Shown here piece by piece: positions 5,948-40,861 of a DNA stretch of 64,000 nucleotides. The first letter of the stretch is position 1; every line of letters begins with the position of its first letter. The stretch lies in the sequence record NC_055733.1; one strand, written 5' to 3'. Under the pieces are notes generated by a model that saw only the letters and a program-made list of their open reading frames with translations, had not been told where the DNA came from and searched no databases. A program made the position numbers and the translations under genes.

Positions 5948-7393
5948 TTACGCTTGTTCGTCGCTACGTGCGCGAGCTTCGTCAAACAGTGCTTTGTTGT
6001 AGCTGTGAGCACAAACACCGTCCATCAGATAAGTAACAAACTCGTTACTGTTCTCATACTGTGCGAATCGCGGGTCAAGAACGTTTACAGTCTTATATTG
6101 ACCGTCGATCTTAACGAGACGCATACGACCAGCTTTGGAAGCTTTCCATGCAGCGTCTTTTGGATTCTTACGAACACCACGCCATTTGCCATTTACGCGA
6201 ATCGCAGAGCATTTGTAAGCCCACTTCTGAGTGTCGCGGTCGCATTTTTGCAGCAAGCCACCACCCATACCGAAAGCAACGTTTTCAACACTGAAACCCA
6301 GTTCTTTGATGAACTTCAAGCAAGCTTCGACATCCTTATCGGAACTCAGGCCGTCTCCTTGAATCACGCGGTAGCTACCATGCAGAACTTTATAACCTTT
6401 GCTGTTTACAGTGAAGCCAACGTTTTTCGCGATAGTCTCCAGTGCATATCCGATATTGTCGAACATGTCGCCAGAGTCAGGACGAATCACGCAAGTACCG
6501 CCACGTGCCAAAATCTCTTTCTTGAATTCACCGGTAGTCAGACGATCAACGGCAGATTTGTAGTCGATAGAGTCAGCAACTACAGCATAAACACCGTCAC
6601 CCCATTGACGAATACTGTTCCAGAATGCTTCATCTTCTTGTTCAGGAGTCAGCATACCTTCATCACCATAACAAATGGTAGTGCTGTGCTCACGCGCTGG
6701 AATACTGATACCAACCGCGATATCATGAGCCAGATTATAGATATCTTGTGCCATAATCAGAGCTTCAACGGTATCGGTACCGATAAAGTTGATCAGGTGC
6801 GCCAGACCACCCAGTTTTGCCGCTTGTTCGCAAGTCGCGCCGCGAGCACCGAAGTCGTGCAAGCGAGTTTTCAGAACGAAATCAAAGTCGGCACCGGTCA
6901 GATCTGAGGTTTCTTTCAGATACTTTTTCACCAGCTTCTTGATTTTGAAACTCAGAGTGGCAACAGAACTCGGATACCAGTGACCACGCAACAGGAAAGT
7001 TTCCAGATGCCCACCAATGCTGAATTCAGGACCGAAAGTCTCAACAACCATAGTTGCATTGCGACCGGGGATAACTTGTCCGTCTTTTACACCGTACATA
7101 TTAACCGGCAGCTTACCACCACGTTCAGTTGCAATTTTCATCCACATGTCATAGGCGAATACATCGCGACCGAAATGTGATTTGTAAAGCATGTTAGCGC
7201 GAGTTACGTCAGCGACGGTAATGCCCTGCTCCAGGACACGCGAAACAAAGTGCAGACCCGATACCATCAACTTATCATCAATACGAGGTTCAGCATAGAA
7301 ACTCGCGGCGTCAGTACCTTGTGGGAACTGCCATGGATGAGTGATTTTGTAAGAGTCGGTGGAAGTACACAGGTTAGATTTAAATACGTTCAT
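5948..7393 (-). CDS. nadV: Nicotinamide phosphoribosyltransferase (NAMPT)
   Basis: TDSYK..H, LHDFGARG, PAREHST, VADS.D, IRPDSGD, RVIQGDG, FGMGGGLLQK.DRDT..WAYK motifs. Start at ATG 7393 after GGAG. Confidence 0.93.
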   Translation of the reverse strand: MNVFKSNLCTSTDSYKITHPWQFPQGTDAASFYAEPRIDDKLMVSGLHFVSRVLEQGITVADVTRANMLYKSHFGRDVFAYDMWMKIATERGGKLPVNMYGVKDGQVIPGRNATMVVETFGPEFSIGGHLETFLLRGHWYPSSVATLSFKIKKLVKKYLKETSDLTGADFDFVLKTRLHDFGARGATCEQAAKLGGLAHLINFIGTDTVEALIMAQDIYNLAHDIAVGISIPAREHSTTICYGDEGMLTPEQEDEAFWNSIRQWGDGVYAVVADSIDYKSAVDRLTTGEFKKEILARGGTCVIRPDSGDMFDNIGYALETIAKNVGFTVNSKGYKVLHGSYRVIQGDGLSSDKDVEACLKFIKELGFSVENVAFGMGGGLLQKCDRDTQKWAYKCSAIRVNGKWRGVRKNPKDAAWKASKAGRMRLVKIDGQYKTVNVLDPRFAQYENSNEFVTYLMDGVCAHSYNKALFDEARARSDEQA

Positions 7394-7514
7394 TTTGAAG
7401 GCTCCCTTCATTGATTGTGGTTTGTTTGTGATTTCTTATCACAAAAAGATTGTCTCATATCTTTAGACACAAAACAAGCTTTTTGTGAGGGGTATTTTCT
7501 ACCCCGTCACGTTA

Positions 7515-8192
7515 TCAGAATACCAGTGCGATACCAGCAACAGCAGAGTTATCATAGCCAACACCGGTAGTTACAGTGTGGCGCAGTTTAACATAGGGCT
7601 GGAACAGCTCGCCAGTCAGAGTCATAGCGATTTCGTGTTCATTGGAAGTCGGAAGACCCAGAGAGAAATCGGTACGTTCATGTTGGGTTTTACGGGTAAA
7701 GTTATATCCTACAGTCATTTCGGGGTGAATTTCATAACTCACACCAGCTTTGATCTTGCTATAGTCTTGACCTTCGTTCATGAAGCTATAACCAGCGCCA
7801 GCGTAGGAATACAGTTTGGCGAACGGCATGTATTCAACGATGCCCTGGAAGTAAGTTTCATGATCGGTATTCACATCACCTTCATAGATGCCGTATTCAG
7901 CACTAGGAACAAAGGTAAAATCATCAGAGATCTGAATTGTCTTGCCCAGAGTACCGGCAGTGTGCTTGGTAGTGTCGTGTTTGACTTCCAGGAAGTAGGA
8001 GTCAGGCAGAGCAACGGAAGCACCGTATTCAGAAACATCGGTAGAGACGTTACGCTCTACATAGATCTTTTCAAATTGAACTTGAGCGGCAGCTTCGGTC
8101 AGATCGGAAGCTTGTGCTTGGGTACAGCCAAAAGATGCAGCAGCTACGGCCAAGCCAATGATTACACTGTGAATAAAGTTTTTGGACATCAA
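7515..8192 (-). CDS. Exported outer-membrane beta-barrel-like protein
   Basis: Signal peptide ending AQA, amphipathic aromatic-rich beta strands, and C-terminal ...GIALVF with a terminal Phe. Confidence 0.65.
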   Translation of the reverse strand: MMSKNFIHSVIIGLAVAAASFGCTQAQASDLTEAAAQVQFEKIYVERNVSTDVSEYGASVALPDSYFLEVKHDTTKHTAGTLGKTIQISDDFTFVPSAEYGIYEGDVNTDHETYFQGIVEYMPFAKLYSYAGAGYSFMNEGQDYSKIKAGVSYEIHPEMTVGYNFTRKTQHERTDFSLGLPTSNEHEIAMTLTGELFQPYVKLRHTVTTGVGYDNSAVAGIALVF

Positions 8193-22562: not shown

Positions 22563-22971
22563 AATAGCAGGTTAGATTGGCATGTCAAGCACCAAAACGA
22601 AAAGGCACCCGAAGGTGCCTTAATTTATCTTAACTGATCACTCATTATCCCAAGAACGTTTTACGTTACGTCCGTCGCGACGAGGACGAGACTTGTCTTT
22701 GGCTGGTTTTTCGATGTGCTCACGCTCTTCCATGATAGACTTGATCAAATCGTAATACTCGGCCAGATTATGAGCGCGTTCGCGATCTGCATCGGAACAA
22801 TCCTGTTGATCTGCATGATATTGTGCAGCAGCGCGAGACTTCAACACAGTTTTACGCAGTGCATTCAGACGTTCGGTAGTCAGATTGCGGAGTTTTTTCT
22901 CAGTTAGAAATTCCATCTTTGTTTCCTACAGGTGGTTTTAATACACTATCACTATCACTAATGGCAGATAT

Positions 22972-23093
22972 TGGCGGAGAAGGTGGGATTCGAACCCACG
23001 ACCAACAGTTTGATTTTGCAAGGGTTTGCGGTAAAGAATCTTAATCAGATTCCGCTTTTTGCGACTACTGCTCTACCACTGAGCTACTTCCCC
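22972..23093 (-). ncRNA. tRNA-like RNA E1 (122 nt) with a greatly expanded anticodon arm
   Basis: Acceptor GGGGAAG/CTTCTCC with G3-U70 and encoded CCA; canonical D arm GCTC-AGTGGTA-GAGC and T arm GTGGG-TTCGAAT-CCCAC; ~54 nt in place of the anticodon loop. Confidence 0.8.
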
Positions 23094-23101
23094 AAATTTT
23101 T

Positions 23102-23240
23102 AACAACACTATGCTGGCGGTCTGGGCCTCGAACCCAGATTACAGGCTTAACAGGCGAGTATTTATTGCGGAAAACATTCTTATCAGAATGAATTTTACA
23201 GTGTCCTACCAATTAGACGAACCGCCAGCATAATGTTGTT
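23102..23240 (-). ncRNA. tRNA-like RNA E2 with an insertion between the D arm and an Asn-like CTGTTAA loop
   Basis: Acceptor TGGCGGT/ACCGCCA extended by ~13 bp; D arm GTCT-AATTGGT-AGGAC; T arm CTGGG-TTCGAGG-CCCAG. Confidence 0.75.
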
Positions 23241-23241
23241 T

Positions 23242-23365
23242 GTTGTAGCGATACTGGATTCGAACCAGTGACGTTTCTCGATGTGCCCACACTTAACGGA
23301 ATCGAACCGTTCTCGATACTTCTCTGCGATCAGAGGCGTTCTCCCGCTGAACTAATCGCGACAAC
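23242..23365 (-). ncRNA. tRNA-like RNA E3 with two T-psi-C arms
   Basis: D arm GTTC-AGCGGGA-GAAC; T arms AACGG-TTCGATT-CCGTT and ACTGG-TTCGAAT-CCAGT; terminal stem closes the molecule. Confidence 0.75.
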
Positions 23366-23381
23366 AAAACAATCTTAACAC

Positions 23382-23801
23382 TTATTTCTTAGAGGGTAAA
23401 CCTTTTTCGTTGAAATTTTTCACTGCCAGTTTGAACTTCAAACGAATCAACGTTTCCCGATTCGGATTTACTTTCATGATCTTGGCGTTACCGCGATGAA
23501 TCAGCGCGTAAACATCCTCGATCTGATTGCGAGCGATAAGCTCCGCGAACTCCTCACTATATCGAATCTGAGTAGTGAAGTCGATAAACTCCTCACCTGA
23601 AATCAGATCAACAGAACGAGTTACGGCACCATCATACATGTATTCCGTGTTTACAACAACTCGAACATTATCAGCACCGTCGAACGAGATCATTGGAATA
23701 CCAAGAGGACGTTTGTATGAAAGTGACAACAGACGATCTTTCTCTTTCTGTTCTTCTTGTTCTTTACGCTTTGCTTCCGTGCCACTTGCCTTCTTCGACA
23801 A
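23382..23801 (-). CDS. Hypothetical protein
   Basis: 139-aa co-oriented ORF. Confidence 0.55.
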   Translation of the reverse strand: MSKKASGTEAKRKEQEEQKEKDRLLSLSYKRPLGIPMISFDGADNVRVVVNTEYMYDGAVTRSVDLISGEEFIDFTTQIRYSEEFAELIARNQIEDVYALIHRGNAKIMKVNPNRETLIRLKFKLAVKNFNEKGLPSKK

Positions 23802-23881: not shown

Positions 23882-24226
23882 TTATAATGACTCTGGATTA
23901 CCAGTCAAGAAAAAATACGCGATTGCGATCAAAATTTTACACACAATATGAAGTGCTTGATCTTGATGTAATCCAATCTTGCTGTTGCACTTAGCATAAT
24001 CGATGATCCAATGACTCACAAGCTCTGCCAAACTAAGCCAAACGCTCTTGGTTGCAACGTATACCACAAGCGCATGAGTAGCACTATGAGCAGTTAGCCA
24101 GTAGAACCAATGCACCCCATAGAGCGGAGAATTGATTGGATTCTTACCACGAGCAATACTATCGGATTGCAGAACATAATCGGCCACAAAATGGCCGATT
24201 ATGAGAATATACAGAATTTCAAACAT
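23882..24226 (-). CDS. DUF3307-like membrane protein
   Basis: GHFVADYVLQ...H..TH...SHWIID..K...DQALH pattern with TM helices. Confidence 0.75.
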   Translation of the reverse strand: MFEILYILIIGHFVADYVLQSDSIARGKNPINSPLYGVHWFYWLTAHSATHALVVYVATKSVWLSLAELVSHWIIDYAKCNSKIGLHQDQALHIVCKILIAIAYFFLTGNPESL

Positions 24227-25451: not shown

Positions 25452-26888
25452 TTAGAAATCGATACCGACGTAACGGTCGCTCATGATCTTGTCGAGCATG
25501 ATTTGCATCGGGTTAAACTCTTTCGCACTCAGGATTGTCTCCATGATTGCAGGACTAAAACCAGAAACAAGAGCAGTGCCTTGATCATCTTTGGTCACCG
25601 GATTGTTAGTCGGGCGCGGGCAAAGATTCCAGAACACCAGTTTCGGCATTTCGTAACCAGCGTCGCGGTAAGTCTGACGAATCACCTCAAAGTTGGTAGG
25701 CTCACGGTCACGCATACGATAGTAACCACTATAGCCACCATCAGCAACGTTGAATTCCATGTCAGACAAGACAACCAACATAGTCGGCATATCTTCTTGC
25801 GGAACTCGATTGCGTACAGCGCGATCAAGAATGATCTTGAATGCACCAGCAAAGTTGGTAGAGCCACCCCACGGAGCGCGTCTCAGATGATTCACCATGC
25901 TTTGAAGATCGTCGCCTTTCTCTTTGATGTTGTAGAACTCAGGATTATCATCGAAGGTAATCACTTCGTTCCGGAACACACCGCGCGAACGTTCGCCGAT
26001 GTACAGACCCAGAGAAATCGCGATGTCCATAGCAGACAAGCCAGCAACAGCGGTCGGAGTGCTCATAGAGCCGGAAACGTCAACCATTGCGATTACGTTT
26101 TCAGTAGAGCCAGCCATCCAGTCGCGTTGTGCTTTCCACTGTGCATCAGCAGCAACGGAAGAACCAGTACGCAGGGATTTGATCATGTCATACGGATAAA
26201 CCGCAGCAGCGTTGATCTTAGCCTCACCCTTTTTCAAGGACTCAAGGTAAGCAACATAATGCTCATTCGCGTTTTTCAGGAATGCTTTCTGATAACGAGC
26301 AGAAGCAACAGACGGCAGTTTATCGAACTCAATACCGTCCCACTGACGAGCACACATCTTTTGTTCAACGGTGTTCGACATACGGACGATAGTGTGACGA
26401 TATTCTTTAGCAGTCATTCGCATAGCTTTGGCCAGAATACCGGCTTCTTTGCCCTTTCGAGGTGCCCACTTTGCAGCAAGACCGTTTTGCTTGGTCATGA
26501 TTGCATCAACCATGATAGCCACAGCAGCGTCCTGAATCGGAGAATTGAACATTGCTACCACGTCTTTGAAGCGACCGATTTCAGGAGTGTTCATCAGAAC
26601 TACGGTGGCGTCAACAGGGTGACGATGCGCAAGGACTTTCAGCAGGCGGATGAATTGTTCACGTTCACCGGCACCACCGCGAATATCGCGAGCCCATTGC
26701 AGAATGCGAACAGCCCAGTCAGGAGACTCGGTATAAGCATCAACAAACATCTGAGTCAGATCTTTCCCGCGAGAGGAACCAATCTGAGAAAACAGATTCA
26801 GACACTTGTCGCCAGTGGTGTAGTTAGTGACAGCACCGTTAGCAGTGCGGGTTTGAGCTTGTACCATTGCATTCATAAAATTAGACAC
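25452..26888 (-). CDS. DUF2828-family TROVE/Ro60-like protein with C-terminal vWA (MIDAS) domain
   Basis: ARDIRGGAGER, LAAKWAPR, IEFDKLPSVA, MIDAS DVSGSM, WGGSTNF, SDMEF and FWNL motifs. Start GTG 26888 after GAGG. Confidence 0.8.
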   Translation of the reverse strand: MSNFMNAMVQAQTRTANGAVTNYTTGDKCLNLFSQIGSSRGKDLTQMFVDAYTESPDWAVRILQWARDIRGGAGEREQFIRLLKVLAHRHPVDATVVLMNTPEIGRFKDVVAMFNSPIQDAAVAIMVDAIMTKQNGLAAKWAPRKGKEAGILAKAMRMTAKEYRHTIVRMSNTVEQKMCARQWDGIEFDKLPSVASARYQKAFLKNANEHYVAYLESLKKGEAKINAAAVYPYDMIKSLRTGSSVAADAQWKAQRDWMAGSTENVIAMVDVSGSMSTPTAVAGLSAMDIAISLGLYIGERSRGVFRNEVITFDDNPEFYNIKEKGDDLQSMVNHLRRAPWGGSTNFAGAFKIILDRAVRNRVPQEDMPTMLVVLSDMEFNVADGGYSGYYRMRDREPTNFEVIRQTYRDAGYEMPKLVFWNLCPRPTNNPVTKDDQGTALVSGFSPAIMETILSAKEFNPMQIMLDKIMSDRYVGIDF

Positions 26889-26901
26889 AGAATTACCTCT
26901 T

Positions 26902-27501
26902 TCAGGTTTGTTTGAATTTGTCCCAATCATAGGACAGTTTGTTTTTCCAGCACTTGCGGCAGAACGAAATGTAACGTTGTTCAGCCCCAATGCAAATTTG
27001 TTCACCTCGACGGATAACATTGCCGTTATCATCAACGCGAGCTACCATACAGGATTTTCTACCACAATCACAGATACCAGACAGTTGTCTAATTTCATCT
27101 GAAATCGAAAGTAATGCCCTAGAGCCAGGGAACAAGTTACCGAGAAAATCGGTACGCAGTCCGTAGCACATAACAGGGATATCCAGCTTGTCAACAACGT
27201 CGGACAGTTCCCACACTTGTTTTTCAGTCAGGAACTGTGCTTCATCAACAAGAACACAGGCGATATCGGACAGTTTACTCTCTTTTTCGATCATTGTAAA
27301 CATGTTTTCGTCAACATGCACACAGCGACACTCGCGCTGGATACCGATACGTGATCCAATCGTACCTTCTGTTCTAGTGTCAAACGCAGGTTTGTACAGC
27401 AGAACGTTTTGATTTCTCTCGTTGTAGTTGAAAGCCACTTGCAGTAATTGAGTGCTCTTGCCCACGTTCATCGAGGCATGTGTAAAAAACAGCTTTGCCA
27501 T
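26902..27501 (-). CDS. tk: Thymidine kinase
   Basis: ASMNVGKST, DEAQFL, YGLRTDF.GNLFPGS, CDCG and Y...CRKC motifs. Confidence 0.95.
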   Translation of the reverse strand: MAKLFFTHASMNVGKSTQLLQVAFNYNERNQNVLLYKPAFDTRTEGTIGSRIGIQRECRCVHVDENMFTMIEKESKLSDIACVLVDEAQFLTEKQVWELSDVVDKLDIPVMCYGLRTDFLGNLFPGSRALLSISDEIRQLSGICDCGRKSCMVARVDDNGNVIRRGEQICIGAEQRYISFCRKCWKNKLSYDWDKFKQT

Positions 27502-33478: not shown

Positions 33479-33503
33479 ATTATTCGTTATTTAGTACGCT
33501 AAG

Positions 33504-33577
33504 AAGCGAGTACCTGATTCGAACAGGTGATCTCTGGGATATGAGCCCAGCGAGGACGGCCTCTCCTCCAACTCGCA
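33504..33577 (-). tRNA. trnfM: Initiator tRNA-fMet(CAT)
   Basis: Three consecutive G-C pairs (CTGGG/CCCAG) and an unpaired 1:72 position; no CCA. Confidence 0.85.
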
Positions 33578-35511: not shown

Positions 35512-35584
35512 TGGAGCGAGTGAGGAGAATCGAACTCCCTATCTACGGCTTGGAAGGCCGAGCGCGTACCTTACGCACACTCGC
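35512..35584 (-). tRNA. trnG: tRNA-Gly(TCC)
   Basis: CGGC-CTTCCAA-GCCG, U73, CCA. Confidence 0.9.
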
Positions 35585-36203
35585 TTTTACAACTTTTTAT
35601 GTGTTTGATCATTCCACCAGTTTTCTTACCGGTTCTACCGCATTTTGGACACGATATAATTGGTCTATTATCTGGTGCGTTTTTGACCGACTCTGAAATT
35701 TTTCTTCTAGTTTCTTCACTTTTTGGCAAACTGGCAATTTTAGCAAGTTTCTCGAAGTGAAGTTTAGCATTTTCTGGATCTTTACGAACCCAGCTATTAC
35801 TTCGTATTTTATTTTTGGATTCTTCCGAATGTCGGAATTTACTAGCCATTTCACTTAATATTTTCTTGGTTTCTTCTGTGTGATGTTTACCGTGAAATTT
35901 CGAAACAGCTCCAGAGTTTATCCAATCCCACCCGCCTTCTCCACCAATCTTCAAATTGTATGTATCATCGCGGCCTACAAAATCACTGTCAACAATTTCA
36001 CGTTCTTTGAGATACATTTCTTCCTTTGTCTGGAATTCGTAAAGTATCTCCTTTTTGAAGTTATCAATCCCGTATTTGGAAATAGATAGTTTCAAATGTT
36101 TACCGGAGCCCATATACCCATCATTTTCATCTGATGTCTTATGTGCGCCTATGTAGAATTTGCCGTTTATTTTGTTGGTGATTTTATAAATTAAGTATTT
36201 CAT
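35571..36203 (-). mobile_element. Freestanding GIY-YIG (Seg-type) homing endonuclease
   Basis: LIYKITNKINGKFYIG.H...DGYMGSG...KYG..NF.KEIL; NUMOD3-like HTEETKKILSE repeats. Confidence 0.9.
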
Positions 36204-36887: not shown

Positions 36888-36903
36888 GGTAAATTGTTAT
36901 TTG

Positions 36904-36977
36904 CGGAGGAGACCGGACTCGAACCGGTGACCTGTCGCTTAACAGGCGAATGCTCTAACCAACTGAGCTACACCTCC
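36904..36977 (-). tRNA. trnN: tRNA-Asn(GTT)
   Basis: TCGC-CTGTTAA-GCGA, G73; no CCA. Confidence 0.92.
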
Positions 36978-40759: not shown

Positions 40760-40861
40760 CCGAGGATACTGGATTCGAACCAGTGACCCACTGCTTCTTC
40801 TGTACTCTCGTTGGAAAGCACAGGAGAAGGCAGTTGTTCTATCCCACTGAACTAATCCCCG
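40760..40861 (-). tRNA. tRNA-Arg(TCT)-like gene with a 28-nt insertion in the anticodon loop
   Basis: Canonical acceptor, D and T arms; ACTGC-CTTCT-[28 nt]-AA-GCAGT. Confidence 0.8.

What the first reader, a model, noticed from the sequence alone, without database searches (positions are those of the whole stretch)
22972..23365. Tandem trio of tRNA-shaped RNAs with remodelled anticodon regions and a shared inserted motif
Seen: three adjacent genes keep the acceptor, D and T arms (the elbow and CCA-end surfaces) but have no usable anticodon arm. E1 and E2 share an inserted module, A(A/T)TCTGAT(T)AAGA(T/A)T-x-TTT-x-CCGCAA, which forms a hairpin (AATCT-GATTA-AGATT; CATTCT-GATA-AGAATG). E3 has a related CTCT-GATCGC-AGAG hairpin. 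A motif shared between different tRNA scaffolds argues for selection, not decay. Established: T4 encodes two stable non-tRNA species in its tRNA cluster with no known function, and tRNA-targeting defences (PrrC, RloC, PARIS AriB) recognise tRNA shape. Inference: a family of phage tRNA mimics (decoys or protein-guiding RNAs) carrying a protein-binding TCTGAT hairpin.
Basis: partly seen in the sequence, partly recalled or inferred. Interest (0 to 1): 0.85.

Follow-up and report, generated by a model that had tools for sequence, protein, structure and literature searches.

The report
tRNA-shaped Y RNAs of phage Ro60
Two of the three odd tRNA-shaped genes are most likely the RNA partners (Y-RNA-like RNAs) of a Ro60-like protein that the same phage encodes 2 kb upstream; they are built as real tRNAs with the protein-binding module inserted beside the anticodon arm, a design not described for Y RNAs.

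Summary
The window is Aeromonas phage Ah1, a T4-like phage. Three tRNA-shaped genes lie on the minus strand: E1 22972-23093, E2 23114-23227 and E3 23245-23361. They are conserved in the Aeh1 group, with compensatory changes in their stems.

E1 and E2 share a real module: a 6-bp hairpin (WUCU-GNNA-AGAW) followed by YUUAC-N-GCAA. The loop varies, so "TCTGAT" as such is not the conserved unit.

The module recurs in about 25 tRNA-shaped genes of unrelated, mostly uncultivated phages. It sits on three scaffolds:
- full tRNA paralogues (Asp, Lys, Phe, Asn, Tyr, His and others)
- anticodon-less E1-type RNAs
- one minihelix

ORF 25452-26930(-), 2.1 kb upstream on the same strand, carries Pfam DUF2828 plus a vWA domain. 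Its model folds as Ro60 over its full length (Foldseek E 2e-8, TM 0.5-0.6). Across 80 viral contigs, the module core UNCNGCAA is strongly enriched next to DUF2828 genes, on the gene strand only (112 observed against 23.5 expected; P 1e-39). In mycobacteriophage and Felix-O1-like YrlA-type RNAs the same motif follows the terminal stem.

Best reading: E1 and E2 are Y-RNA-like partners of a phage Ro60-like protein, arranged as a circular permutation of YrlA. No binding or expression was shown. E3 lacks the motif and stays unassigned.

This is a new variant of a known kind.

The parts
22972..23093 (-). E1: tRNA-shaped RNA without an anticodon loop. Acceptor stem GGGGAAG/CUUCUCC (G3.U70 in Ah1), D arm, stem GUAGU/ACUGU enclosing a 53-nt insert, T arm, and encoded G-CCA.
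   Evidence: Rfam tRNA 54.3 bits with a 53-nt insert. Homologous anticodon-less RNAs with the same acceptor stem and the same GCAAAAAUCAAAC stretch occur in L166, L168 and L154.
23023..23063 (-). E1 module: hairpin GGAAUCU-GAUUA-AGAUUCU followed by UUAC-C-GCAA. This is the proposed binding site for the Ro60-like protein.
   Evidence: R1 scores it 47 bits. The hairpin shows a compensatory change in phiAS5 (AUUCU/AGAAU).
23114..23227 (-). E2: tRNA paralogue. Acceptor UGGCGGU/ACCGCCA, tRNA-Glu-like D arm, the module inserted after nt 26/27, a degenerate Asn-type anticodon arm CUCGC-CUGUUAA-GCCUG, and a T arm. It encodes no CCA.
   Evidence: Sequence reading and numbering. Helix counts. The loop is identical to that of the phage's own tRNA-Asn.
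23163..23202 (-). E2 module: hairpin CAUUCU-GAUA-AGAAUG followed by UUUUC-C-GCAA.
   Evidence: R1 scores it 51 bits. It is nearly invariant in six phages.
23104..23238 (-). E2 with its leader-trailer helix: CAACAUUAUGC pairs with GCAUAGUGUUG, extending the acceptor stem to about 18 bp.
   Evidence: 18 of 18 pairs are kept in six phages, one through A-U to G.U (helix 8).
23245..23361 (-). E3: tRNA-shaped RNA. Acceptor UCGCGAU/AUCGC(U)A, D arm, a short hairpin CUCUG-AUCG-CAGAG in the anticodon-arm position, then a branched variable region (helix UCGA/UCGA enclosing a second T-arm-like hairpin and GUG-UGGG-CAC), and a T arm. It has no module motif, so its membership in the family is open.
   Evidence: Rfam tRNA 25.9 bits, below threshold. 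Compensatory changes occur at pair 1-72, in the D stem, the UCGA helix, the inner T stem and the outer T stem (helices 1-7).
25452..26930 (-). Gene for a Ro60-like protein (DUF2828 plus DUF7788/vWA; MIDAS motif DVSGSM). The ORF runs up to 27035 and overlaps tk; the true start is probably near 26930 or slightly downstream.
   Evidence: Pfam. PHROG 850 'RNA-binding protein'. AlphaFold model with pLDDT 82 and pTM 0.82. The top nine Foldseek PDB hits are all Ro60, E 2e-8 to 8e-7, TM 0.47-0.59, aligned over the full length.
22602..22621 (-). Intrinsic-terminator-like hairpin downstream of the rI.1-like ORF. It is the likely end of the transcription unit that holds E3-E2-E1.
   Evidence: Consensus scan.

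Best explanation
E1 and E2 are non-coding RNAs of the Y RNA kind. They are the RNA partners of the phage's own Ro60-like ring protein (DUF2828/vWA, 25452-26930, minus strand).

The shared module is the protein-binding site. It consists of a short helix ending in ...AAGA(A/U)N, followed by single-stranded YUUAC-N-GCAA and an A/C-rich tail.

The tRNA body serves three likely purposes. It lets the host tRNA machinery (RNase P, 3' trimming, CCA addition) cut the RNAs out of a polycistronic transcript. It stabilises them. And, as in bacterial YrlA, it offers a tRNA-like surface for a second partner.

In architecture the E1 type is a circular permutation of YrlA. In YrlA the RNA ends sit on the Ro-binding stem and the acceptor stem is closed by a loop. 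Here the ends sit on the acceptor stem and the Ro-binding stem is closed by a GNNA loop.

By analogy with Rsr-YrlA-PNPase in bacteria and with the phiLo Ro60-Yrl-PNPase complex, the RNP would gate or tether the Ro-like ring to host RNA-decay or RNA-repair enzymes during infection.

Shown here: the anatomy, the family, the Ro60 fold of the model, and the genomic association between motif and gene. Inferred: binding, processing and downstream function.
For: (1) Fold. The model of the 492-aa protein matches only Ro60 structures over its full length: phiLo Ro60 9l5y, Xenopus 1yvp/2i91, human 9nf8/9nep, with E 2e-8 to 8e-7 and TM 0.47-0.59. Generic vWA hits reach only TM about 0.2. The sequence profile also picks the phiLo TROVE protein first, weakly. 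Homologues in mycobacteriophages are annotated 'Ro-like RNA binding protein'.

(2) Position. The trio lies 2.1 kb downstream on the same strand in Ah1, and the arrangement is the same in Aeh1 and PX29. Chen et al. 2014 (PMC4201824) found YrlA genes within 4 kb of Ro60 genes on the same strand.

(3) Motif-gene association. In 80 IMG/VR loci centred on DUF2828 genes, UNCNGCAA on the gene strand occurs 112 times within 1 kb downstream (23.5 expected, P 1.5e-39) and 68 times upstream (23.7 expected, P 1e-13). There is no excess on the other strand. The consensus of the 179 flanking instances, AAGGAU-NNN-UACAGCAA, matches the hairpin 3' strand plus motif of E1 and E2.

(4) Whole-module hits. Model R1 finds tRNA-form members near DUF2828 genes in L249, L247, L172 (two in tandem), L229 and L192. 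All 10 hits are on the gene strand. In 118 other phage tRNA-cluster loci the only hit was a weak 19.4-bit match that was not inspected.

(5) Isolated phages. In Aeromonas phage LAh_6, from a different phage family, an E1-like RNA and nine motifs within 920 nt lie just upstream of the gene. In mycobacteriophage Lewan, three RNAs follow the Ro-like gene, each with a terminal stem followed by UA(A)C-A-GCAA-UUAAAC; the middle one has a T-AS-D core whose best Rfam hit is YrlA. In Felixounavirus Alf5 there are four such units, the fourth with a permuted tRNA core.

(6) The module is the functional unit. It sits on full tRNAs, on anticodon-less tRNAs and on one minihelix, and its hairpin covaries.
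Against: No binding, expression or RNA ends were measured. The Rfam YrlA model does not match E1-E3; the only 15-bit hit spans the E2 T arm and the E1 D arm, the tandem-tRNA artefact that the YrlA authors warn about. The canonical YrlA motif GNCGAAN0-1G is absent. In Ah1, eight small ORFs separate the gene from the RNAs. Most other module-bearing contigs could not be checked for a DUF2828 gene because only short stretches were fetched. DUF2828 genes and tRNA clusters are both common in large phages, so part of the co-location could be shared synteny. The strand-specific 1-kb enrichment argues against that. Within the Aeh1 group, sequence identity of E1-E3 (86-91%) is no higher than that of flanking ORFs, so in-clade conservation alone is weak evidence.
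Confidence: 0.68

Rival explanations
1. The RNAs are decoys or sponges for host tRNA-targeting defence nucleases or acceptor-end toxins (PrrC, RloC, AriB, colicin-like enzymes, MenT or CapRel type), acting independently of the Ro-like protein. They would mimic tRNA shape while the module blocks or traps the enzyme.
For: Full-tRNA members keep anticodon loops identical to those of canonical phage tRNAs of types often attacked: Tyr, Asn, Asp, Lys, Phe, His. Each has a canonical twin in the same contig. Many members keep an acceptor stem and CCA.
Against: It does not explain why the module motif is enriched, on one strand only, next to DUF2828 genes. It does not explain why the same motif sits on non-tRNA-form Y-like RNAs. 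E1-type members have no anticodon loop at all. No defence gene or nuclease was tied to them here. This reading could coexist with the Ro reading, for example as bait plus repair.
Confidence: 0.12
2. The genes are tRNAs interrupted by a new kind of short (about 41-45 nt) intron or mobile insert. The insert is removed to give ordinary tRNAs.
For: In full-tRNA members the insertion point varies (26/27, 27/28, 28/29, 29/30, 31/32). The flanks always restore a 5-bp anticodon stem with a 7-nt loop.
Against: E1-type RNAs and the minihelix have nothing to splice into a tRNA, yet they are conserved across very different phages. In E2 the restored stem has two mismatches in all six phages. Every member is redundant with a canonical tRNA. 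There is no bulge-helix-bulge motif, the insert is far too small for a group I or II intron, and no ribozyme family matches.
Confidence: 0.07
3. The RNAs are tRNA-scaffolded small regulatory RNAs. The single-stranded A/C-rich stretch (UUAC-N-GCAA AAAUCAAAC) would base-pair with host or phage RNA, and the tRNA body would only supply processing and stability.
For: A conserved, G-poor, probably unpaired 20-nt stretch lies next to a hairpin. Engineered tRNA scaffolds are known to stabilise inserted RNAs (own knowledge: Ponchon and Dardel 2007).
Against: No target was identified. The motif is the same in phages of Aeromonas, Mycobacterium, Escherichia and in marine contigs, which fits a conserved protein partner better than host-specific base pairing.
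Confidence: 0.06
4. The elements are decaying tRNA pseudogenes with no function.
For: The Aeh1 genome paper lists them as 'Val CAC' plus three pseudogenes (PMC1524935). In-clade identity is not above background. Ah1 E3 carries a C2.U71 mismatch.
Against: Twelve compensatory pairs within the clade. The module and the E1-type sequence are conserved in unrelated phages. The motif is associated with a specific gene.
Confidence: 0.03

Closest known systems
Bacterial and phage YrlA-type Y RNAs bound by Ro60/Rsr (Rfam RF02553; Chen et al. 2014, PMC4201824; phiLo Ro60-Yrl1/2, PMC12135203)
   Same: Both are non-coding RNAs with tRNA-like D and T arms. Both are encoded within a few kb of a Ro60-type protein gene on the same strand, often as several RNAs in a row. 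Both have a short conserved motif next to a helix as the presumed protein site. The motif UA(A)C-A-GCAA-UUAAAC seen in mycobacteriophage YrlA-like RNAs matches the E1/E2 module.
   Different: In YrlA the RNA ends form the Ro-binding stem, which takes the anticodon-stem position, and the acceptor stem is closed by a loop. In E1 and E2 the ends are a normal tRNA acceptor stem (E1 with encoded CCA) and the binding stem is closed by a GNNA loop. Some relatives keep a complete anticodon arm as well. The Rfam YrlA model does not detect them, and the bacterial motif GNCGAAN0-1G is replaced by UNCNGCAA. The protein belongs to the divergent DUF2828 branch, 12-15% identical to solved Ro60 structures.
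Phage T4 species 1 and 2 RNAs (rnaC, rnaD)
   Same: They are stable small RNAs of unknown function encoded beside T4-type tRNA genes. rnaC has a T arm and an acceptor-like end.
   Different: There is no module (R1 finds nothing in the T4 region) and no sequence similarity. T4 was not examined here for a DUF2828 gene.
tmRNA tRNA-like domain
   Same: It is an anticodon-less, tRNA-shaped RNA with an acceptor stem and CCA. Some E1-type members have the G3.U70 plus A73 alanine identity set (Ah1, L166, L168).
   Different: E1-type RNAs have no pseudoknots and no conserved tag reading frame. ARAGORN calls no tmRNA in the window. G3.U70 is not conserved in Aeh1, PX29, phiAS5 or L154.
Engineered tRNA scaffolds for RNA expression (own knowledge: Ponchon and Dardel 2007)
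   Same: A foreign RNA module is placed in the anticodon region of a tRNA so that tRNA processing enzymes release and stabilise it.
   Different: The case here is natural, and the module has its own conserved partner gene.

Membership tests
Y RNA (YrlA-like, Ro60-associated) | Encoded close to (within about 4 kb) a Ro60-type protein gene, on the same strand. | tested here: met
   The gene lies at 25452-26930(-) and the RNAs at 22972-23361(-). The Ro60 fold rests on an AlphaFold model and Foldseek. The layout is the same in Aeh1 and PX29.
Y RNA (YrlA-like, Ro60-associated) | A tRNA-like domain with D- and T-arm mimicry. | tested here: met
   Canonical D arms (A14, G18G19, A21) and GGUUCGAAUCC-type T arms are present, with covariation in the stems.
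Y RNA (YrlA-like, Ro60-associated) | Match to the Rfam YrlA covariance model (RF02553), i.e. the order terminal stem, T arm, closed acceptor-like stem, D arm, terminal stem. | tested here: not met
   The only hit is 15.4 bits (gathering score 69). It spans the E2 T arm and the E1 D arm, which is a tandem-tRNA artefact. The order of parts is circularly permuted relative to YrlA.
Y RNA (YrlA-like, Ro60-associated) | A conserved Ro-binding motif beside a helix (GNCGAAN0-1G in bacteria). | tested here: inconclusive
   The bacterial motif is absent. A different motif, helix plus UNCNGCAA, is shared with phage YrlA-like RNAs (Lewan, Alf5) and is enriched beside DUF2828 genes.
Y RNA (YrlA-like, Ro60-associated) | Physical association with the Ro60 protein. 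| not testable with these tools
   This needs immunoprecipitation or EMSA.
Functional (decoding) tRNA | A 5-bp anticodon stem with a 7-nt loop (U33, purine 37), and detection by tRNA finders. | tested here: not met
   ARAGORN calls none of the three. E1 has no such loop. In E2 the loop is canonical but the stem has U.U and C.C mismatches and a 41-nt insert lies 5' of it. In E3 the loop is only 4-6 nt.
tRNA with group I intron or archaeal-type BHB intron | A group I core (over 200 nt), or a bulge-helix-bulge motif at the exon-intron junctions. | tested here: not met
   The inserts are 41-53 nt. No intron or ribozyme family matches in Rfam at E up to 10. No 3-4-3 bulge-helix-bulge can be drawn at the junctions by sequence inspection.
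T4 rnaC/rnaD | Sequence or structure similarity to the T4 species 1 and 2 RNAs. | tested here: not met
   R1 has no hit in the T4 tRNA region L006. blastn of the trio finds only Aeh1-group phages.
Ro60/TROVE protein (for the partner gene) | A HEAT-repeat ring plus a vWA domain with a MIDAS motif. | tested here: met
   The model aligns over its full length (520-590 columns) to nine Ro60 structures. DVSGSM is invariant in the alignment. Pfam TROVE itself is not hit; the protein matches DUF2828 and DUF7788.

The most novel reading that the evidence does not exclude
The tRNA-form Y RNAs are working adaptors that couple the phage Ro60-like ring to tRNA biology. They keep a true acceptor end, and in many relatives a true anticodon arm identical to that of a canonical phage tRNA. 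They would therefore be recognised by the same enzymes, whether synthetases, modification enzymes or host anticodon nucleases. This would bring the Ro-like ring, and through it PNPase or an RNA ligase, to damaged or attacked tRNAs. That would amount to a phage tRNA surveillance or repair RNP, or a bait that senses tRNA-directed defence. It would also make these RNAs living intermediates between tRNAs and Y RNAs.
Probability: 0.15. Interest if true: 0.85.

Novelty: new variant of a known kind. Interest (0 to 1): 0.66.

Why it matters
Ro60-Y RNA particles are conserved from bacteria to humans, where Ro60 is a lupus and Sjogren autoantigen. What the tRNA-like part of bacterial Y RNAs does, and where Y RNAs came from, remain open questions.

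Here the same binding motif sits inside otherwise ordinary tRNA genes, some with intact anticodon arms and CCA ends, in T4-like and other large phages. This gives a natural series from tRNA to Y RNA. It also gives a simple sequence signature, helix plus UACAGCAA, for finding the RNA partners of the large DUF2828 branch of Ro-like proteins. That branch has 704 phage records, including Felix-O1-like, KVP40-like, Listeria, Staphylococcus and Campylobacter phages.

Culturable test systems exist: Aeromonas phages Aeh1, Ah1 and LAh_6, and E. coli Felixounaviruses.

It also corrects annotations. These genes are filed as tRNA-Val, tRNA-Leu, tRNA-Ala, tRNA-OTHER or pseudogenes, or are not annotated at all.

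Tried and rejected
- Rfam at gathering score and at E up to 10 gave nothing beyond tRNA.
- ARAGORN called no tRNA or tmRNA in the trio.
- blastn against 50,697 phage records found the trio only in 13 Aeh1-group records. Two metagenomic members found nothing among isolates.
- IMG/VR searches with a flanking protein and with an exact E2 21-mer recovered only the same four phages.
- Anticodon display. E2 contains three heptamers identical to the Tyr, Ile and Asn loops of the phage's own tRNAs (P about 0.003, chosen after the fact). I dropped the idea because the Ile match is just the variable GNNA loop of the hairpin.
- GCGG/CCGC pairing around the E1 hairpin is not supported by covariation.
- A pseudoknot between the hairpin loop and the AAAUCAAAC stretch is not conserved.
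- A tmRNA-like tag reading frame in E1 is not conserved, because an indel shifts the frame.
- Alanine identity (G3.U70) is present in only about half of the lineages.
- Neighbouring ORFs gave no RNA-related domains apart from the Ro-like gene.
- A shared 210-aa protein in several module loci turned out to be a GIY-YIG homing endonuclease typical of tRNA clusters.
- The genome-contig scan gave three hits that look like chance.
- My script test for a 6-bp terminal stem next to the motif is uninformative, because chance alone would give more than one match per instance.
- The double-T-arm pattern of E3 was not found in the 80 DUF2828 loci.
Full report
**Identity of the window and the observation.** The window is Aeromonas phage Ah1 (MG250483), a T4-like Straboviridae phage of the Aeh1 group. 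Three tRNA-shaped elements lie head to tail on the minus strand, between ORF 23382-23801 and an rI.1-like ORF at 22638-22916. A terminator-like hairpin follows at 22602-22621. ARAGORN finds 23 ordinary tRNAs at 31-41 kb but none of the three. Rfam's tRNA model scores E1 (22975-23093) at 54.3 bits with a 53-nt insert in the anticodon region. It scores E3 at 25.9 bits, below threshold, and does not detect E2. In relatives the elements are annotated inconsistently: tRNA-Val CAC in Aeh1, tRNA-Leu with an intron and tRNA-OTHER in PX29, tRNA-Ala in phiWae14, and nothing in Ah1. The Aeh1 genome paper lists 'Val CAC' and three pseudogenes without comment (PMC1524935).

**Anatomy of E1.** With canonical numbering, E1 has acceptor GGGGAAG/CUUCUCC, a normal D arm, a 5-bp stem GUAGU/ACUGU enclosing 53 nt, a T arm and an encoded G-CCA.

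**Anatomy of E2.** E2 has acceptor UGGCGGU/ACCGCCA, U8, and a tRNA-Glu-like D arm and variable loop. A 41-nt insert follows nt 26/27. Next comes an anticodon-like arm, CUCGC-CUGUUAA-GCCUG. Its loop and 13 nt in all are identical to the phage's own tRNA-Asn, but its stem has two mismatches.

**Anatomy of E3.** E3 has a normal acceptor stem, D arm and T arm. A short hairpin with a 4-6-nt loop sits where the anticodon arm should be. The variable region is branched and holds a second T-arm-like hairpin.

**Ends and covariation.** E2 and E3 lack CCA. Their leaders and trailers pair, extending the acceptor helix to about 18 and 14 bp. The canonical tRNA-Asn and a weak 'Met' call show the same feature. 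On an alignment of six phages, 93% of cells in the 17 proposed helices are paired, against 39-50% when partners are slid. Twelve pairs carry compensatory changes. Overall identity of E1-E3 to Aeh1 and PX29 (86-91%) is no higher than that of the flanking ORFs. The in-clade signal is therefore the pattern of change, not the amount.

**The shared module is real and is found well beyond this clade.** E1 and E2 share a hairpin followed nine nucleotides later by GCAA. A strict pattern search (hairpin, spacer, GCAA, T loop) in IMG/VR and in JGI metagenomes recovered E1 and E2 of the four Aeh1-group phages. It also recovered tRNA-shaped genes from unrelated large phage contigs. An alignment of 18 modules shows invariant UCUG, AGA and U-N-C-N-GCAA. 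The loop is variable and mostly GNNA. Two hairpin pairs covary (UA 7 / CG 5 / GC 5, and AU 9 / UA 9).

**Where covariance model R1 does and does not match.** R1, built from that alignment, scores members at 25-52 bits. In 118 other phage tRNA-cluster loci (about 1 Mb) its only hit was a weak 19.4-bit match (E 0.48, L110) that I did not inspect, and it finds nothing in the T4 rnaC/rnaD region. Rfam has no family for these RNAs.

**Three kinds of scaffold carry the module.**
- *Full tRNA paralogues.* The module lies on the 5' side of the anticodon arm. The insertion point differs between genes (26/27 to 31/32), and the flanks always restore a 5-bp stem and a 7-nt loop. Loop types seen are Asp, Lys, Phe, Asn, Tyr, His, CAU and CUA. 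For the six contigs checked with ARAGORN (L140, L145, L083, L139, L150 and the window), each also has a canonical tRNA with the same anticodon.
- *Anticodon-less E1-type RNAs.* L166, L168 and L154 share E1's acceptor stem GGGGAAG/CUUCUCC, the stretch GCAAAAAUCAAAC and a CCA end, although they come from quite different contigs.
- *A minihelix.* This is an acceptor stem plus the module only (L168).

This spread argues that the module itself is the functional unit. It argues against a simple intron.

**The partner gene.** An all-against-all comparison of ORFs in module loci pointed to a 527-codon ORF in the window, 25452-27035(-), with a homologue in L160. It carries Pfam DUF2828 and DUF7788/vWA, and matches PHROG 850 'RNA-binding protein'. 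An AlphaFold model built on 20 homologues has pLDDT 82 and pTM 0.82. It matches nine Ro60 structures over its full length: Thermus phage phiLo, Xenopus and human, with E 2e-8 to 8e-7 and TM 0.47-0.59. All other hits are isolated vWA domains at TM about 0.2. A sequence profile also ranks the phiLo TROVE protein first, weakly. Homologues occur in 704 phage records and are annotated 'Ro-like RNA binding protein' in mycobacteriophages. Ro60 proteins of bacteria and phages bind Y RNAs. The YrlA class of Y RNAs has a tRNA-like domain and is encoded within about 4 kb of the Ro60 gene on the same strand (PMC4201824; PMC12135203). The trio lies 2.1 kb downstream of the Ro-like gene on the same strand, in Ah1, Aeh1 and PX29 alike.

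**Testing the association with R1.** I fetched 80 IMG/VR loci centred on DUF2828 genes. R1 found tRNA-form members in L249, L247, L172 (two in tandem, 0.5-0.7 kb after the gene; the second has E2's D arm), L229 and L192. All ten hits were on the gene strand. That is 5 of 80 loci against 0 of 118 controls, for which I calculate a Fisher P of about 0.01 by hand.

**Testing the association with the 8-mer.** The invariant 8-mer UNCNGCAA gives a much stronger signal.

| Region (relative to the DUF2828 gene) | Strand | Observed | Expected | P |
|---|---|---|---|---|
| 1 kb downstream | gene strand | 112 | 23.5 | 1.5e-39 |
| 1 kb upstream | gene strand | 68 | 23.7 | 1e-13 |
| 1 kb downstream | opposite strand | 29 | 23.5 | no excess |
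| 1 kb upstream | opposite strand | 21 | 23.7 | no excess |

Distant flanks and control loci sit at background, about 0.3 per kb. The consensus around the 179 flanking instances is AUUAAAGGAU-NNN-UACAGCAA-A.UAAAAAA. This is the same as the 3' strand of the E1/E2 hairpin plus the motif (A-AGAAU-G-UUUUCCGCAA and A-AGAUU-C-UUUACCGCAA).

**Isolated phages.**
- *Aeromonas phage LAh_6*, from a different phage family, has an E1-like tRNA-form RNA and nine motifs within 920 nt immediately upstream of its DUF2828 gene. A DUF3307 membrane-protein gene, also present beside the Ah1 trio, lies among them.
- *Mycobacteriophage Lewan* has three RNAs after its 'Ro-like' gene. Each has a terminal stem whose 5' strand is followed by UA(A)C-A-GCAA-UUAAAC. 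The middle RNA has a T arm, closed acceptor-like stem and D arm core, and its best Rfam match is YrlA (21 bits, E 0.033).
- *Felixounavirus Alf5* has four units of the form CAGAAGACC(G/A)-(U)UUAC-A-GCAA...(C/U)GGUCUGG just after its 'RNA-binding protein' gene. The fourth encloses a permuted tRNA core.
- *Contig L160* has a distant DUF2828 homologue. A terminator and a strong promoter follow, and then an array of four hairpin-plus-AAC-A-GCAAAAAUUAAAU units that includes an E1-type RNA.

**Interpretation.** In the order of its parts, the E1 type is a circular permutation of the phage YrlA type. The order is D arm, helix strand, [loop or RNA ends], helix strand, UAC-N-GCAA-(A/U-rich, UUAAAC-like), T arm, acceptor strand, [RNA ends or loop], acceptor strand. 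I therefore read E1 and E2 as Y-RNA-like partners of the phage Ro60-like protein. The module is the protein site. The tRNA body gives processing, stability and a tRNA-like handle. By analogy with Rsr-Y RNA-PNPase in bacteria and with the phiLo complex, the particle would direct or gate host RNA decay or repair during infection. Binding, RNA ends, expression and function are inferred, not shown. E3 has no UNCNGCAA motif, and its double-T-arm pattern was absent from the 80 DUF2828 loci. It may be a second kind of partner RNA, as YrlB is to YrlA, or it may be unrelated.

**Rivals.** Decoy action against tRNA-targeting defences remains possible and could coexist with the Ro reading, but it does not explain the link between motif and gene. 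An intron reading is attractive for the full-tRNA members, because their anticodon stems are restored across the insert. It fails for the E1-type RNAs, the minihelix and E2's mismatched stem. A base-pairing small RNA is disfavoured because the same motif serves phages of very different hosts. Pseudogenes are disfavoured by the covariation and by conservation across unrelated phages.

**Novelty.** Y RNAs with tRNA-like domains and phage Ro-like proteins are both known, and YrlA-like RNAs were reported in 22 phages in 2014. I found no description of three things: the tRNA-form, unpermuted architecture, in some cases with a complete anticodon arm and CCA; the UACAGCAA signature; and the link to DUF2828 proteins of T4-like, Felix-O1-like and other phages. 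Five papers in the library mention DUF2828, none about phages or RNA. Other literature searches found nothing relevant. I rate it a new variant of a known kind.

Noticed in passing
window 40760-40861 (-): A fourth odd tRNA-shaped gene (E4) sits just after gene 57B. It has a tRNA-Arg-like body (D loop GGAUAG with A20) and a conserved 28-nt insert that turns the anticodon arm into a long helix, in which UCU pairs with AGA. Removing the 28 nt would give the loop CUUCUAA, the Arg UCU type. The long helix has a compensatory change in PX29, and the leader and trailer pair over about 11 bp. Relatives annotate it as tRNA-Glu or tRNA-Lys. The phage's tRNA set lacks any canonical Arg or Val tRNA. The cut sites needed to excise the insert would leave 2-nt 3' overhangs, as RNase III does. 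That is speculation only.
   Followed up: partly
window 36903-36977 (-) and 33503-33577 (-): The canonical tRNA-Asn, and a weak ARAGORN-only 'tRNA-Met' that Rfam does not find, lack an encoded CCA. Both have 9-11 bp of leader-trailer complementarity, like E2, E3 and E4. These may be RNase III-type processing sites.
   Followed up: no
Some are a tRNA followed by a lone T arm. About 20-30 are nested, with one acceptor stem enclosing two T arms; examples are L041/L106/L113 and the recurrent TAGTCAGG...CCTGACTAC group. Rfam has no dedicated family for them. Some lie next to GOLLD RNA or tmRNA.
   Followed up: partly
L140, L150, L151, L145 (uncultivated phage contigs): tRNAs come in pairs with the same anticodon: one canonical and one with a long variable arm. 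Examples are Cys 87 nt, Glu 86-87 nt, Lys 89 nt, Pro 97 nt and His 92 nt. In bacteria long variable arms are normally limited to Leu, Ser, Tyr and Sec.
   Followed up: no
L253 (Aeromonas phage LAh_6) 3980-4920; window 23882-24226 (-): Nine UNCNGCAA motifs lie within 920 nt upstream of the LAh_6 DUF2828 gene and partly overlap a DUF3307 membrane-protein ORF. A homologous DUF3307 ORF (29% identity, E 7e-8) lies between the Ro-like gene and the trio in Ah1. An RNA ligase 2 gene lies 3.7 kb downstream in LAh_6.
   Followed up: partly
L254 (Escherichia phage Alf5) 6760-7640: Four unannotated Y-RNA-like units and at least two unannotated tRNA-like sequences lie between annotated tRNA genes, right after the 'RNA-binding protein' gene. 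One region is annotated as an antisense hypothetical ORF (7375-7698).
   Followed up: partly
window 35571-36203 (-): A GIY-YIG/NUMOD3 (Seg-like) homing endonuclease gene sits inside the tRNA cluster between tRNA-Gly and tRNA-Ala. Homologues sit in the tRNA clusters of several unrelated contigs.
   Followed up: yes
window 23247 (-), E3 position 71: Ah1 alone has U at position 71 of E3, giving a C2.U71 mismatch in the acceptor stem. All five relatives have G.
   Followed up: no
window 25554-26961 (-): Five UNCNGCAA motifs fall inside the coding sequence of the Ro-like gene itself, where about 0.4 are expected. Across 80 loci the gene body shows a mild excess on the sense strand (55 observed, 35 expected). 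The cause is unknown; it could be a codon or peptide effect or embedded sites.
   Followed up: no
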